A stretch of 64,000 nucleotides of DNA from Scyliorhinus canicula (GCF_902713615.1 NC_052168.1:11470001-11534000); one strand, 5' to 3'. Shown: positions 10,301 to 56,866, counted from the first letter of the stretch. The notes: generated from the sequence alone by a model not told the origin. Translations and numbers: made by a program.

Positions 10301-13300
10301 TTAACTGCTGTCCTCCAGCGAGAGCTTGTCAAACAGGTACTCTCCCATCCCATTCTCAGGAGTTCCCAGCCGCTTCAGGTTGGTGATGTAGTCGCCCAGT
10401 CGCTTGATGACCTTGACCTGCTCATCCAAATAGTGAGTCTCCAGAAAGTCACACAGCTGGGAGAGAAAGAAATAGAGAGACAGTCAAAAATAGGAAGTTG
10501 GGTGCCAACAGCATCAGTTTGAGGTCAGGAAAGATGCTCGATTTCATGTCCCAAATGTTAGGATCCCAGAAACTAAAATTGCAAAACTGAGCAAGAATAC
10601 TTAGAAGATGCCTATTGGTCATGTTAAACGCAGTCAATTGGCCCCAAACAGATCCTCTTTTTACATATCTTATGACCATATTAATCTTCATTCTAACCCT
10701 TCTATGTATTTACATGTGTACCTGTGTTGCCATATTATGCATTCTTTATTTACTAAAATGATCTGTTTTGAGCTGCTTGCAGAAAAAACACTTGTCACTG
10801 TACCTCATTACATGCAACAATAAACAAATCCATCCATCCAACCCAAAGACCACTAGTTCCGGTTTACTGGCTTCCTGTGCAGACAACCCTTTCTGGAGCT
10901 CTGTCTGGTCAGACTATTGCAAATGGCACAGATCTGGCTCCCACCCCTTACTTCTCAGTTTCCTCCAACTAAGATGTCTTGTGACAAACCACCATCCCTC
11001 AAAATTATCCACATCCAAGGGATTCTCCAGAATCAAACATGTTCCATTAGCCATCTATTGGTAAACAATAATGATATAAAACATAGAACAGTACAGCACA
11101 GAACAGGCCCTCGATGTTGTGCCGAGCAATGATCACCCTACTCAAACCCACGTATCCACCCTATACCCGTAACCCAACAACCCCCCCCCCCCGCCACCTT
11201 ACTTTTTTTAGGACACTATGGGCAATTTAGGATGGCCAATCCACCTAACCCGCACATCTTTGGACTGTGGGAGGAAACCGGAGCAAACCCACGCACACAC
11301 GGTGAGGACGTGCAGACTCCGCACAGACAGTGACCCAGCCGGGAACTGAACCTGGGACCCTGGAGCTGTGAAGCATTTATGCTAACCACCATGCTACCCA
11401 AAATGAACCCTTATCACAGCTTTTAGCAGACATACTGCCTGTAGGTCTTTAAAAAATTACTGCAATGTAACAATTTCTACAGTCATCACACAAAGCACCT
11501 CGCAACCAATCACATACTGGATAGACAATGGAGCAGTAATGTGCACAGCAAGCCCTCACTCCCAGGTAACAATGTGATAAATGACAATATGATGAATGAC
11601 AGATTGTTGGTGAAGAATTAGATATTGACCAGGACAACGAGGGCAACAGTGGAGAAAGGGCAATGTTGAAATTTACTTTCTGGTTTTATCTACATTTTAA
11701 AAATATATATTGTTTCACTTCACATCCAGGCTCATAGCAAATGTGGAGGGTCTCCAATTGGTTGATCCTGTCAAAGGCAATGAAACAATACAAGTCTACC
11801 AGTGATCAGAATGATCATGTGAAGCTTACATGAGGATCAGTCTGGGTGGTGGCGAGTTGGTGAAGATCCAGCAAACTCTGGTTCACATTCTTCTCCAGAT
11901 CCAGGGCAACCTGCATTGCCTGGAGACTGTTGCCCCACTCATCCTTCTCTGGTTTCTGCAATGGAGAAAGACAGGTCAGTTATTTCAGGGTGCGGTAATT
12001 ACATAGTTTTCACCCTCATGTCAACATTTTCCTTGCTTTGTGCAGGGTTACAGGACTGATGTACAAAAGGTGTTTGGAGTTGGGCCTCCAGACAGCTCAG
12101 TCCTCCCACCCAGGAATTGAATGTCTCAACTATGTCAGGGAGAAGACCAGACACCAGAGGTCAATGAACATTTCCCCTCTGGTAATGAACCCCATCCCCA
12201 CAATTCAAACCTTCACATCCTGCAAGAGGATACGGCCTCCACGTCGATTCTGGAATTTCATCAGCTTCTCCGCATGTTCCCGCTTCTCCTGGGACTGATG
12301 TTTGAAGAACTGGGAGAAATTGTGGAGGGCGACATCGTCCCGGTCAAAGAAAGACGTCTGGAAGAACAAGGCAAAAATCCATGAATACACCACTGACCCC
12401 AATTCTAGTCCTCTTCCAGCCCTCTCCTCAAACTGACTATTCCATATGAAGTTACATTCCTTTGGTATATTGAACCAGTTCATAACACAACATCCTTGGT
12501 TTCCAGTTGGGAAGTTTAGCCAGACAGGGGATCAATGAACCATCCAATGCCAGCAGAATAGTGCAGGTTTGGTAAGCGAGTGAAGGCTCCCATTTCAGCA
12601 CAAAATTCAAACTTGTAGATACTAAACCAATGCAGATAGATGGCAGATGGAGTTTAGTCCGAACAAATGTGAGGTAATGCATTTTGGAAGGTCTAATGCA
12701 GGTAGGGAATATACAGTAAATGGTAGAACCCTCAAGAGTATTGACAGTCAGAGAGATCTAGGTGTAGAGCTCCACAGGTCACTGAAAGGGGTAACACAGG
12801 TGGAGAAGGTAGTCAAGAAGGCATATGGCATGCTTGCCTTCATTGGCCTGGGCATTGAGTATAAAAATTGGCAAGTCATGTTGCAGCTGTATAGAACCTT
12901 AGAGAGGCCATGCTTGGGAGTATAATGTTTGATTTTGGTCACCACACTACCAGAAGGATGTGGAGGCTGTAGAGGCTGCAGGAGATTTACCAGGGTCATA
13001 TAATTCAGTGCATAAGGAGGCCATTCAGCCCATCAAGTCTGCACCAGCTCTTGGAAAGAGCACCCTACCCAAGCCCACACCTCCACCCTATCCCCATAAC
13101 CCAGTAATCCCACTCAACACCAAGGGCAATTTTGGACACGAAGGGCAATTTATCATGGCCAATCCACCTAACCTGCACATTTTTGGACTGCGGGAGGAAA
13201 CCGGAGCACCCGGAGGAAACCCACGCACACACGGGGAGGATGTGCAGACTCCGCACAGACAGTGACCCAAGCCGGAATCGAACCTGGGACCCTGGAGCTG

Positions 13301-54315: not shown

Positions 54316-56866
54316 TTAACTGCTGTCCTCCAGCGAGAGCTTGTCAAACAGGTACTCTCCCATCCCATTCTCAGGAGCTCCCAGCCGCTTCAGGTTGGTG
54401 ATGTAGTCGCCAAGTCGCTTGATGACCTTGACCTGCTCGTCCAAATAGTGAGTCTCCAGAAAGTCACACAGCTGGAAGAGAAAAAAAAAGTCAAAAACAT
54501 GAAAATCTGTTCTCTGCACACCCACTGTTCCTTGCAGAGAATTGGTGTTCACTTAATTATGCCTCAAAACCTTTGTAGATTGTAAATCTGTTTGGGATGT
54601 TAGTAAGTCAGGAGAATTCTATAAACTAGACAGGAATTTTCTGTTATGTCCAAAAGCACCTTTACATCCAATCCATATTTGGTGTAGCCACTGTTGAGCA
54701 GTAGGACATGCAGTGGGTACAGAGCAAGATCCCACAGACAACAATGTAATAAGTGACTAAGACAGATGGTATGTGATGTTGATCAAGGATTAGATATTAG
54801 GCCTATGGGGACAATCAGTGCCTCAGGGTCTTTTACATCCACCCATATCGTCAGGGGTCTCCGTTTTAACATCTGATCAGATGATCCTGCACTGGACTGT
54901 CAGCTTTTAAATTCAAGTCCTAAAATGTTGTTCACTTCACATCCAGACCCATGGGCTACAGTAGAATGTGGGGATTCTGGTCTCCAACAGAATTACAATG
55001 ATGTGAAGCTTACATGAGGGTCAGTCTGGGTGGTGGCGAGTTGGTGAAGATCCAGCAAACTCTGGTTCACATTCTTCTCCAGATCTAGGGCAACCTGCAT
55101 TGCCTGGAGACTGTTACCCCACTCATCCCTCTCTGGTTTCTACAGTGGAGAAAGACAGGTCAGTTATTTCAGGGTGCTTGCATCACTTGTCCACTACGAA
55201 GGCCTTCAATATCAGGTCAACACTTCTTATTTAAATGGAGTGCTACGGCCCAAGCTGCAGAAACAAGCTTTGTTTGCAATAAATAAAGTGTTCAGCCACC
55301 ACTTAGCAAGATTCAGACATTGTTCTGTGCAAGTTATTCATGTGAAGAGAGACTGGTGAAGTTATAAAGAACTCCCTCCCCCTTTTGGATTGGATTATCC
55401 AGTTGCAATTGAAGCTGCCATTTCCCCCACTCCCCGTCCAACCTTCACATCCTGTAGGAGGATGCGGCCTCCACGTTGATTCTGGAATTTCATCAACTTC
55501 TCCGCGTGTTCCTGCTTCTCCCGGGACTGATGTTTGAAGAACTGGGAGAAGTTGTTGAGGGCCACATCGTCCCGGTCAAAGAAAGACGTCTGAAAGGGAA
55601 CAACCCAAATTCCATCATTCAGCAAACCCCTCTACTAAATCTAACTGCTGATTCAATATGAAGTTACTAAGCTCTCTTTGCCTTCCTCTATTCTAACGAA
55701 TAGTCTGTAACCCAATTTGAAGGATTAGTTTATGGGACAATGACCATCCAATACTAGAAAAATATTGAAGTACCATTTTGATAAACAGGTAAAGACTCCA
55801 TTTCAGTTGAGGCACAGAATAGTCTTATTAAATTAAAGCTTTTGTATTGGTTCAGTGCCTACTCAAAGCAGGAATTGAAATAGTAGAAAAAATGCATCTG
55901 ACTGCTAGAAAAAAGTCAAATTGAACATAAATTTAAATGGGATTTTTAAAAAATTACTTCTAACAGAAGAGTCTCATTTCTTCCTGAAAAATGGCATGAC
56001 TTCCATTAGGAATGCATCAATATTGGTTAAATTTCTCCCATTACCATTGAGAATATCTTATGCACAACACTAATGACCAGTTATGGGACCAGTCACCCAG
56101 AAAATAGATTGAATTCTCTGGTAGTCAGAATATCTGCAAGTAAAAAAGGTAGAGGCGGGCATGATATCATTTAAGATGCATCTAGACAGATGTATGAAGG
56201 GGCGGGGAACAGAGGGAAGTAGATCCTTGGAAAATAGACGACAGATTTAGATAAAGGATCTGGATCGGCACAGGCTGGGAGGGCCGAAGGGCCTGTTCCT
56301 GTGCTGTAATTTTCTTTGTTCTAAAGCTGGTGTCAGATAAAAGTGAGCATGAAACTGGTCAAATGATTAAAATCCTAACTGGTTCATTACTGAAAGTTGC
56401 TGTCTATACCAGTGCAGCCGGCTACAGGCGACTCCATTCCCACACCCACTTTGCTGCCAACTTAACTCCCATCTGAATTAGTCAACAATTCCATTCAGAT
56501 GCAGCAACTACAGGGGCAATCAGCAAATTCCAGTCACATTAAATTAACAATTCACTCAAGAACACTTTTGCTCTTTACACATTACTCAAGCAACCAGTTG
56601 AGATTGGAAATTACTATTCAAATCTCAGCCCGCAGTATAACTGTTAGGTTGGATGTCGTTGTTAAGACAGTAACAAAATTTAAAGAGGTACCAAGGTTGA
56701 AATAGAGCAAGAATTTATACTAGTGCAATCAGTTTTATTTAAAATCCACAAATGCAAAACTCACCAAAGAAAGATAAAGGTAGGAGGCAGTGAGCTCCAT
56801 ATTAATCTGCTTGTTGACAGCTGCTTCACAATCCTGGTGATAGTTCTGACAAACTTGGGAATCCAT
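54316..56866 (-). CDS. Ferritin subunit, array copy 5 (Lys62), 176 aa; exons 56866-56765, 55589-55443, 55139-55014, 54471-54316
   Basis: Intact four-exon structure. MDSQVCQNY...; exon 2 [49 protein letters not shown]. Confidence 0.95.
56145..56323 (+). mobile_element. CR1 3' end fragment in intron 1 of copy 5
   Basis: Near-identical to 25722-25901. Confidence 0.75.

What the first reader, a model, noticed from the sequence alone, without database searches (positions are those of the whole stretch)
10301..56866. Expanded array of ferritins that all carry the ferroxidase-inactivating Glu62Lys change
Seen: helix B reads HQSQEKREH (copies 1 and 4), HQSQEKQEL (2), HQSQEKQEH (3) and HQSREKQEH (5), against HQSHEEREH in human FTH1. 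The AAG codons are at 12283-12285, 24534-24536, 32974-32976, 44314-44316 and 55515-55517. Glu27, Tyr34, Glu61, Glu107, Gln141 and the three-fold channel Asp131/Glu134 are kept. Known: Glu62 bridges the two irons of the ferroxidase centre; mammalian L-ferritin has Lys62 salt-bridged to Glu107; E62K/H65G is the classic ferroxidase-null H mutant. Inference: at least five intact genes encode non-catalytic, L-like subunits on an H/M-looking backbone that automatic annotation would label heavy chain. They may be a chondrichthyan L-type lineage or a convergent one, and could act as structural or dosage partners of a catalytic subunit, or have a non-iron role.
Basis: partly seen in the sequence, partly recalled or inferred. 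Interest (0 to 1): 0.9.

Follow-up and report, generated by a model that had tools for sequence, protein, structure and literature searches.

The report
Shark ferritins with a disabled-looking iron site
Five intact, selected, tandem ferritin genes of the small-spotted catshark all carry lysine instead of the glutamate that bridges the two irons of the enzyme site, a change fixed in an old shark-only ferritin family that also lost iron-responsive control, and it most likely arose independently of the same change in mammalian light-chain ferritin.

Summary
There are five complete four-exon, 176-residue ferritin genes on the minus strand, and AAG (Lys62) sits at the five stated places. Every other ferroxidase and channel residue is kept, except His65Leu in copy 2.

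The window is Scyliorhinus canicula LR744052.1, about 11.47-11.53 Mb. NCBI calls these genes "ferritin, middle subunit-like". The paralogues are under purifying selection (dN/dS 0.10-0.26).

Lys62 is not a local oddity. It is present in 38 of 38 members of a strongly supported clade (100/99) from sharks of five orders. I saw no ray or chimaera member.

Mammalian FTL falls elsewhere in the tree. A snake ferritin next to a Bcl-2-family gene, as FTL is next to BAX, keeps Glu62. The shark Lys62 is therefore most likely convergent, although an AU test cannot reject a common clade (p 0.39).

This clade and its Glu62 sister clade lack the 5' iron-responsive element that the same scan found in four other ferritin genes.

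Loss of catalysis is inferred and not shown. The invariant Lys62/Glu107 pair and the drifting His65 support it. A preprint already reports very large ferritin expansions in sharks, but my literature searches found no report of the Lys62 clade. The scan noted at least two further copies just past the window end.

The parts
10301..14076 (-). Ferritin gene 1 (176 aa). Exons 13975-14076, 12211-12357, 11830-11955 and 10301-10456. Lys62 codon AAG at 12283-12285.
   Evidence: Gene model with GT-AG introns. 100% identical to XP_038639503.1 / P0313. Pfam PF00210, E 4.6e-36.
22981..27100 (-). Ferritin gene 2 (176 aa). Exons 26999-27100, 24462-24608, 24057-24182 and 22981-23136. Lys62 codon at 24534-24536. 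Also carries His65Leu.
31206..34883 (-). Ferritin gene 3 (176 aa). Exons 34782-34883, 32902-33048, 32474-32599 and 31206-31361. Lys62 codon at 32974-32976.
42010..46455 (-). Ferritin gene 4 (176 aa). Exons 46354-46455, 44242-44388, 43863-43988 and 42010-42165. Lys62 codon at 44314-44316.
54316..56866 (-). Ferritin gene 5 (176 aa). Exons 56765-56866, 55443-55589, 55014-55139 and 54316-54471. Lys62 codon at 55515-55517.
   Evidence: The exon 3/4 junction 54471|55014 is seen in RNA contigs of run X5.
14077..14340 (-). Conserved promoter and 5' UTR of gene 1: several CCAAT/ATTGG boxes, a TATA box (CCTGGGGTATAAAT at 14151-14164) and no IRE.
   Evidence: Alignment A1, pattern search and Rfam scans.
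27101..27370 (-). Promoter and 5' UTR of gene 2 (TATA motif at 27200-27213), no IRE.
34884..35150 (-). Promoter and 5' UTR of gene 3 (TATA motif at 34976-34989), no IRE.
46456..46720 (-). Promoter and 5' UTR of gene 4 (TATA motif at 46576-46589), no IRE.
56867..57130 (-). Promoter and 5' UTR of gene 5 (TATA motif at 56979-56992). A CAGTG lies after the TATA box, but it has no pairing stem and gives no IRE match.

Best explanation
The window holds five members of a tandem array of at least seven genes. They belong to a shark-specific ferritin clade that split from a Glu62-bearing, chondrichthyan-only, IRE-less ferritin lineage.

On the stem of the clade the bridging ferroxidase ligand Glu62 became Lys (GAG to AAG), and it has stayed Lys since crown sharks diverged.

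The proteins keep everything needed to fold and to join a 24-subunit shell: 71-75% identity to catalytic H/M chains, the three-fold channel residues Asp131/Glu134, and the inner-surface residues Glu61/64/67.

Inferred: with Lys62 paired to the invariant Glu107, as in mammalian L chain, the di-iron site cannot form. These would then be catalytically dead or strongly weakened L-like subunits that co-assemble with Glu62 subunits.

Inferred: expression does not depend on IRP/IRE translational control. It is driven by a conserved CCAAT/TATA promoter and is restricted to some samples or tissues. The ovary is the leading candidate, by analogy with the Greenland shark clusters.

Lys62 here is most likely convergent with Lys62 of mammalian FTL.
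For: Shown:
- The five genes are intact.
- Pairwise dN/dS is 0.10-0.26 at dS 0.06-0.17.
- Two more Lys62 genes lie just beyond the window, in L004.
- The Lys62 clade has 31 rows from Scyliorhinus (2 species), Mustelus, Heterodontus, Chiloscyllium, Hemiscyllium, Stegostoma, Cetorhinus, Carcharodon and Heptranchias. Support is 100/99, and the same with site 62 removed.
- Lys62 and Glu107 are each present in 38 of 38 sequences. His65 is replaced in 7 of 38 by Leu, Arg, Tyr or Cys. Gln141 is Glu in all 12 orectolobiform sequences, as in FTL.
- Only five substitutions are fixed in the clade (V33L, A52S, E62K, K119Q, T174S), and none adds a replacement carboxylate.
- No IRE was found in the window even at E<=10, nor for Lys62 genes in L004 and L012, nor for sister-clade genes in L002 and L009. 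The same scan finds IRE_I at 42.6-53.3 bits upstream of the catshark and sawfish 'Hl' ferritins, the snake ferritin and elephant FTL.
- Spliced clade mRNA reaches word depths in the thousands in run X5. It is absent or near absent in X1 and X18, and in another sample of X5's own study.

Convergence:
- FTL sits inside the amphibian/reptile M-like group (99/92; 97/90 without site 62).
- Lys62 needs three changes on the tree.
- The snake ferritin lies beside a 192-aa Bcl-2-family gene, as elephant FTL lies between BAX and GYS1, and it has Glu62.

From the literature:
- E62K/H65G/K86Q H chain is used as a ferroxidase-null control (PMC4029007).
- The Lys62-Glu107 salt bridge replaces the iron site in L chain (PMC11396501).
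- Shark ferritin clusters are ancient and expressed in the ovary (bioRxiv 10.1101/2024.09.09.611499).
Against: - No activity data exist for any of these proteins or for E62K alone.
- Glu27 (37/38), Tyr34 (38/38), Glu61 (37/38) and His65 (31/38) remain far better kept than in mammalian L, where position 27 is Tyr/His and position 65 is Gly. This could mean that some metal-binding function is retained.
- The AU test does not reject Lys62 clade + FTL (p 0.39), or Lys62 clade + sister + FTL (p 0.35).
- RNA contigs are short and the paralogues are about 95% alike. The 3' UTR of gene 5 has no coverage, so none of the five window genes is individually shown to be transcribed.
- The tissue is unknown because run metadata are coded.
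- Co-assembly with Glu62 subunits is not tested. The nearest Glu62 ferritin clusters I located lie about 5.5 Mb away on the same chromosome.
Confidence: 0.65

Rival explanations
1. The Lys62 subunits are still catalytic or metal-handling. Glu61, or another nearby carboxylate, takes over bridging, or a single-iron site A (Glu27, His65) still binds and passes Fe(II). On this view Lys62 tunes the centre rather than killing it.
For: Glu27, Tyr34, Glu61, Glu107 and Gln141 are almost invariant in the clade, and His65 is kept in 31 of 38 sequences, over a span that includes the hexanchiform-galeomorph split. Mammalian L lost positions 27 and 65 (consensus). The tested null mutant changes His65 and Lys86 as well.
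Against: Glu62 is the only ligand shared by both irons (established ferritin chemistry). None of the clade-fixed changes adds a carboxylate. His65 has been replaced at least five times by residues as different as Leu, Arg, Cys and Tyr. The Lys62/Glu107 pair is invariant, as expected for a salt bridge.
Confidence: 0.2
2. The shark Lys62 clade and mammalian FTL share one origin. An L lineage with Lys62 already existed in the jawed-vertebrate ancestor, and the shark array is its cartilaginous-fish orthologue.
For: AU tests do not reject Lys62 clade + FTL (p 0.39) or Lys62 clade + sister + FTL (p 0.35). The Lys62 clade, its sister clade and FTL share some C-terminal states that FTH, 'Hl' and M lack: Leu for His173, Gly for Ala in G-M-A-E-Y, and Leu in R-L-G. 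A Frag1/DRAM-family exon lies next to the array.
Against: The ML tree places FTL among amphibian and reptile M-like ferritins with 99/92 support, also when site 62 is removed. The snake ferritin beside a Bcl-2-family gene, with an IRE, has Glu62 and a full ferroxidase set. The shark sister clade has Glu62. FTL has an IRE and the shark clade has none. The Lys62 clade lacks the L-specific states seen at positions 27, 57, 60 and 65. I did not show that the Frag1 exon is TMEM150B.
Confidence: 0.07
3. The genes are redundant, decaying copies of a runaway tandem expansion, with no specific role for Lys62.
For: Sharks carry hundreds of ferritin copies. Some copies in both clades show further ligand losses: copy 2 has His65Leu, and Heptranchias and Pristis copies have others. 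Transcription of the individual window copies is not shown.
Against: All five reading frames and all splice sites are intact. dN/dS is 0.10-0.26. Lys62 is kept in 38 of 38 sequences across five shark orders. The promoters are conserved. Clade mRNA is abundant and spliced in run X5.
Confidence: 0.05

Closest known systems
Mammalian ferritin light chain (FTL)
   Same: Lys at position 62 together with Glu107, the pair that forms the salt bridge replacing the iron site in L chain (PMC11396501). Orectolobiform members also share Glu141 with FTL. It is a presumably non-catalytic subunit that coexists with catalytic subunits.
   Different: Identity is only 56-60%. The shark genes keep Glu27 and mostly His65, and they lack the L states at positions 27, 57, 60 and 65. 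They have no IRE, whereas FTL has one at 53 bits. They are not next to BAX/GYS1 in the 10 kb I could see. They occur as a tandem array. The ML tree separates the two groups.
Engineered human H-chain ferroxidase-null mutant (E62K, H65G, K86Q; '222'-type)
   Same: The same Glu62-to-Lys replacement on an H-type backbone. Copy 2 (Lys62 + Leu65) and some Heptranchias, Cetorhinus and S. torazame copies also lack His65.
   Different: These are natural genes kept by selection. Most copies retain His65, and all retain Lys86 (KKPE). The activity of E62K alone is not documented in what I could read.
Fish/amphibian M (middle) ferritin, e.g. bullfrog M (PDB 1MFR family)
   Same: It is the best PDB matches by sequence, at 72% identity over the full length, with the same length and exon structure. 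NCBI names the catshark genes 'middle subunit-like'.
   Different: M chains have the complete ferroxidase centre (Glu62) and are fast catalysts. The shark clade does not have it. It forms a separate, chondrichthyan-only lineage.
Shark ferritin mega-expansions reported for the Greenland and white sharks (bioRxiv 10.1101/2024.09.09.611499)
   Same: Ancient tandem ferritin clusters conserved between distant sharks, with tissue-specific (ovary) expression. The catshark array is probably part of the same phenomenon.
   Different: In the passage I read, the preprint counts copies labelled FTL and FTH1 and does not mention a Lys62 clade, loss of the IRE, or the relation to true FTL.
Human FTHL17 (testis-specific H-like ferritin reported to lack ferroxidase activity; from my own memory, not checked here)
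   Same: An H-like ferritin without an IRE, expressed in the germline, that does not oxidise iron.
   Different: FTHL17 is an intronless retrogene of mammals and is unrelated in origin. The basis of its inactivity is different. I did not verify any of this with the tools.

Membership tests
Ferritin-like domain, eukaryotic 24-mer ferritin (Pfam PF00210) | Full-length match to the ferritin four-helix-bundle profile | tested here: met
   P0313 (identical to gene 1) scores E 4.6e-36, 124 bits, over profile positions 2-141 of 142. Exon 2 alone hits more than 200 PDB ferritins.
Ferritin-like domain, eukaryotic 24-mer ferritin (Pfam PF00210) | Vertebrate ferritin gene structure of four exons with conserved junctions | tested here: met
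   Exons are 102, 147, 126 and 156 bases with GT-AG introns in all five genes. One junction is confirmed in RNA.
Ferritin-like domain, eukaryotic 24-mer ferritin (Pfam PF00210) | Assembly into a 24-subunit shell that stores iron | not testable with these tools
   This is only inferred, from 71-75% identity to shell-forming H/M chains and from the kept residues Asp131 and Glu134.
Catalytic H/M-type ferritin subunit | Complete di-iron ferroxidase centre: Glu27, Tyr34, Glu61, Glu62, His65, Glu107, Gln141 | tested here: not met
   Position 62 is Lys in all five genes and in 38 of 38 clade members. Copy 2 also has Leu65.
Catalytic H/M-type ferritin subunit | Fast Fe(II) oxidation by the homopolymer | not testable with these tools
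   This needs a recombinant protein assay.
Mammalian-type L ferritin (FTL lineage) | Lys62 with Glu107 in place of the iron site | tested here: met
   Lys62 and Glu107 are invariant in the clade. The bridge itself was not modelled.
Mammalian-type L ferritin (FTL lineage) | The other L-specific states (27 Tyr/His, 65 Gly, acidic 57 and 60) | tested here: not met
   The clade consensus has Glu27, His65, His57 and Gln60.
Mammalian-type L ferritin (FTL lineage) | Descent from the FTL gene (tree position; location between BAX and GYS1) | tested here: inconclusive
   The ML tree places FTL elsewhere (99/92), and no Bcl-2 or glycogen synthase gene lies within 10 kb of gene 1. However, the AU test does not reject a joint clade (p 0.39), and only 10 kb of flank could be inspected.
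IRP/IRE-regulated ferritin mRNA | Canonical IRE hairpin in the 5' UTR | tested here: not met
   There is no IRE_I or IRE_II match in the window at the gathering score or at E<=10, nor in a 161-base scan of the gene 5 leader. Four positive controls score 42.6-53.3 bits.

The most novel reading that the evidence does not exclude
Sharks independently evolved a two-component ferritin system. An IRE-less, tissue-restricted (possibly ovarian or oocyte) ferritin lineage split into catalytic Glu62 subunits and non-catalytic Lys62 subunits that co-assemble. This would repeat, by the same amino-acid change, the H/L division of labour that mammals reached much later from a gene that is still catalytic-looking in snakes.
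Probability: 0.4. Interest if true: 0.7.

Novelty: new variant of a known kind. Interest (0 to 1): 0.6.

Why it matters
The non-catalytic L subunit is usually treated as a late vertebrate, mainly mammalian, invention. This finding has three consequences.

- It would give a natural replicate for asking why ferritin shells benefit from 'dead' subunits. The shark clade reached the same Glu62-to-Lys change on an otherwise H/M backbone and has held it since crown sharks diverged.
- It would give a clean natural test of what Lys62 alone does to the di-iron site.
- It puts a molecular distinction into the very large shark ferritin expansions that have so far only been counted.

The linked loss of the IRE in this clade and its sister clade points to a ferritin pool outside normal iron-dependent translational control, possibly for provisioning large yolky eggs.

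The side result that a snake ferritin beside a Bcl-2-family gene still has the full ferroxidase set and an IRE bears on when the mammalian L chain lost catalysis.

Tried and rejected
- **Full-length search of the window proteins.** The spliced proteins could not be passed by reference. I searched with exon 2, took the full-length relative P0004 and then P0172 as queries, and reached the window's own protein through cluster members.
- **Non-mammalian L chains.** My third protein search, seeded from an L-like fusion protein (P0071), returned mammals only. Frog, reptile and fish L sequences are therefore missing from the tree, and the long FTL branch is not broken. An attempt to reach bullfrog L through PDB with P0146 hit unnamed 'Ferritin' entries at the top, not bullfrog L.
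- **AU tests.** Neither Lys62 clade + FTL nor Lys62 clade + sister + FTL was rejected, so the tree alone does not settle convergence.
- **Synteny for the shark genes.** The ±10 kb flanks show only more ferritins or nothing. Callorhinchus shows an MMP gene, and Amia M shows TNKS1BP1-like and RAD9 genes. None of this ties the shark array to the BAX-FTL-GYS1 block.
I confirmed only a Frag1/DRAM-family terminal exon at 2-151. The paralogue was not identified.
- **Copy-specific expression.** The paralogues are too alike and the contigs too short. The gene 5 3' UTR has no coverage, and the gene 4 exon 4 + 3' UTR reaches at most a 0.44 share of words. The tissue is hidden by coded metadata.
- **Literature.** Ten searches found no paper on Lys62 in shark ferritins. 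Subscription journals are not covered.
- **Structure prediction.** I did not run it, because the tool returns no coordinates and the Lys62-Glu107 distance could not be read.

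
Full report
**1. The observation**

A degenerate DNA pattern for His-Gln-Ser-x-Glu-Lys-x-Glu gives exactly five matches in the window. All are on the minus strand, and none is expected by chance.

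Anchoring the other exons by peptide motifs gives five complete genes. Each has exons of 102, 147, 126 and 156 bases, an AG before each of exons 2-4 and a GT after each of exons 1-3, an ATG and a stop. Each encodes 176 residues. tblastn with one of the proteins finds these 20 exons and nothing else, so the window has no fragments or pseudogenes.

In all five genes Glu27, Tyr34, Glu61, Glu107, Gln141, Asp131 and Glu134 are present. Copy 2 also has Leu at position 65.

**2. Where the window comes from and what the genes are called**

Gene 1 is 100% identical to XP_038639503.1, 'ferritin, middle subunit-like' of Scyliorhinus canicula. That protein is encoded on LR744052.1 at a position that puts the window at about 11,470,001-11,534,000.

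A neighbouring locus (L004) overlaps gene 5 and holds two more genes with the same HQSQEKQEH helix just past the window end. The array therefore has at least seven members. This agrees with an earlier scan note of further copies there.

On the same chromosome, about 5.5 Mb away, lie ferritin genes of two other lineages with Glu62.

**3. Selection and expression**

Pairwise synonymous divergence between the five copies is 0.06-0.17, and dN/dS is 0.10-0.26. That indicates purifying selection.

About 180 bases of promoter are conserved in all five copies, with several CCAAT/ATTGG boxes and a CCTGGNGTATAAAT motif.

In RNA run X5, contigs cover all four exons of gene 5 at 98% identity or better, with summed word depths in the hundreds to thousands. 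One joint, 54471|55014, is exactly my exon 3/4 junction. Run X1 shows only an intronic repeat, and two raw-read runs show almost nothing. Another sample of X5's own study holds none of the words of gene 4's last exon. Expression of the clade is therefore real, spliced and sample-restricted.

The paralogues are too similar for individual assignment, and the 3' UTR of gene 5 is not covered. I cannot say which copies are transcribed. The tissue is hidden.

**4. How widespread Lys62 is**

A search with exon 2 against 1.8 billion representative proteins gave a zebra-shark relative with the same helix. Searches from there returned many shark proteins.

I built a maximum-likelihood tree of 106 ferritins. 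The four invertebrate outgroup rows were spliced together from mis-fused tandem gene models, and I note this here.

- The window genes sit in a clade of 31 rows with support 100/99.
- The clade has members from Carcharhiniformes, Orectolobiformes, Lamniformes, Heterodontiformes and the hexanchiform Heptranchias.
- No ray or chimaera sequence falls in it, although ray and chimaera ferritins are in the data set.
- Removing positions 61-63 from the alignment leaves the clade at 100/99.
- Over 38 clade sequences, Lys62, Glu107 and Tyr34 are invariant.
- His65 is replaced in seven sequences by Leu, Arg, Tyr or Cys.
- Gln141 is Glu in all twelve orectolobiform sequences.
- Only five substitutions are fixed in the clade and absent from all other groups: V33L, A52S, E62K, K119Q and T174S. 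E62K is the only one at a catalytic ligand, and none adds a carboxylate that could replace Glu62.

**5. Relation to H, M and L**

The Lys62 clade is sister (96/79) to a chondrichthyan-only clade with Glu62. That clade includes a Callorhinchus and a Pristis gene.

True FTH1 orthologues (skate, chimaera, tetrapods, ray-finned fishes) form another group. A further chondrichthyan 'Hl' group is separate.

Mammalian FTL, on a long branch, falls among amphibian and reptile M-like ferritins (99/92; 97/90 without site 62). Lys62 then needs three origins on the tree: the shark clade, FTL, and one Heptranchias sister-clade copy. AU tests do not reject FTL joined to the Lys62 clade (p 0.39) or to that clade plus its sister (p 0.35). 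The tree alone is therefore not decisive.

Independent evidence comes from gene order.

- Elephant FTL lies between a 192-residue Bcl-2-family gene and glycogen synthase, which is the BAX-FTL-GYS1 block.
- A garter-snake ferritin lies just downstream of a 192-residue Bcl-2-family gene in the same orientation.
- That snake ferritin has an IRE.
- It carries Glu62 and the complete ferroxidase set.

If that gene is the snake FTL orthologue, Lys62 arose in the FTL lineage after it separated from sauropsids. The shark Lys62 would then be convergent. I put this at about 85-90%.

**6. Iron-responsive element**

Rfam finds no IRE anywhere in the window at the gathering score or at E<=10, nor in a short, sensitive scan of the gene 5 leader. 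None is found for the following genes either:

- the two extra Lys62 genes in L004;
- a white-shark Lys62 gene (L012);
- two catshark sister-clade genes (L002);
- two Callorhinchus sister-clade genes (L009).

The same scans find IRE_I at 42.6-53.3 bits just upstream of the catshark and sawfish 'Hl' ferritins, the snake gene and elephant FTL. Loss of the IRE is therefore real. It is shared by the Lys62 clade and its sister clade, so it is older than Lys62.

**7. Mechanism**

Established knowledge:
- Glu62 is the ligand that bridges both irons of the H-chain centre.
- In mammalian L chain the iron site is replaced by a Lys62-Glu107 salt bridge that stabilises the bundle (PMC11396501).
- An H chain with E62K, H65G and K86Q is used as a ferroxidase-null control (PMC4029007).

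Shown here:
- Lys62 and Glu107 are invariant in the clade.
- His65 drifts.
- No compensating carboxylate appears.

Inferred: the di-iron site cannot form, so these are catalytically dead or much weakened subunits that rely on Glu62 subunits in mixed shells.

Against a fully dead site, Glu27, Tyr34, Glu61 and mostly His65 are much better kept than in mammalian L. Some metal binding or iron-transit role cannot be excluded; I put this at about 20%. E62K alone has not been assayed in anything I could read.

**8. What is already known**

A Greenland shark genome preprint reports 155 'FTL' and 179 'FTH1' copies in three clusters. The clusters are conserved with the white shark for at least 250 million years and are expressed in the ovary. 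The expansion itself is therefore known.

In ten full-text searches I found no report of the Lys62 clade, of its IRE loss, or of its relation to true FTL. Subscription journals are not covered. Ferritin crystals were first seen outside mammals in this very species (Tecce 1952, cited in PMC11719527).

**9. Verdict**

'Non-catalytic' is still a prediction.

This is a new variant of a known kind: a non-catalytic ferritin subunit, here arising in sharks within an IRE-less, tandemly expanded lineage. It is moderately to clearly interesting for ferritin biochemistry and for vertebrate gene-family evolution.

Noticed in passing
window 2-151 (+): An open frame ending in a stop matches the last 26 positions of Pfam Frag1/DRAM/Sfk1 (E 1.9e-5). 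The protein atlas points the same way. It is probably the last exon of a TMEM150/DRAM-family gene lying tail-to-tail with ferritin gene 1. Which paralogue it is was not determined.
   Followed up: partly
window about 5462-5860 (-), 6837-7085, 57522-57770, 58526-58759, 60697-61059, and 56174-56361 in intron 1 of gene 5: A SINE-like repeat whose translation reads ...[36 protein letters not shown]... recurs in the flanks. The intronic stretch 56174-56361 collects RNA reads on both strands, with an A>G difference at 56270. This is most likely cross-mapping from other copies.
   Followed up: no
window 59116-59790 (+): ORFs resembling a retroelement polyprotein, possibly Ty3/gypsy-type reverse transcriptase/protease pieces, lie in the right flank.
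   Followed up: no
L005 (Thamnophis elegans CM020113.1), gene at 10001-14072: A ferritin annotated 'higher subunit-like' lies directly downstream of a 192-aa Bcl-2-family gene, as elephant FTL does. It has an IRE at 48.8 bits and keeps Glu62 and all other ferroxidase residues. The snake counterpart of FTL therefore looks catalytic.
   Followed up: partly
L010/L011 (Amia ocellicauda CM071098.1): Two 'middle subunit' ferritin genes lie between tankyrase-binding-protein-like genes and a RAD9 gene. From memory, that neighbourhood resembles human 11q12-13, where FTH1 lies. This would not fit a simple M = FTL orthology.
   Followed up: no
L002, L009, L012, L004: No IRE was found for any tested gene of the Lys62 clade or of its Glu62 sister clade, including two Callorhinchus genes. 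'Hl'-clade ferritins of the catshark (L003) and sawfish (L008) have canonical IREs.
   Followed up: yes
proteins P0202, P0220, P0257 (Heptranchias perlo, sister clade): Position 62 has changed independently outside the Lys62 clade: Lys in P0202 and Asn in P0220 and P0257. This suggests repeated loss of the bridging ligand in expanded shark ferritin arrays.
   Followed up: no
proteins P0156, P0157, P0160, P0163 and similar models of 240-290 aa such as P0151 and P0152: These database models show two overlapping ferritin matches, roughly residues 1-129 and then 37-176. They appear to be fusions of neighbouring tandem ferritin genes rather than real long proteins.
   Followed up: partly
L003 15543-21900 (-) and L008 13807-21454 (-): In both the catshark and the sawfish, the IRE-bearing 'Hl' ferritin is paired tail-to-tail with a longer ferritin-domain gene (222 and 231 aa) on the opposite strand. 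I did not look at that partner.
   Followed up: no
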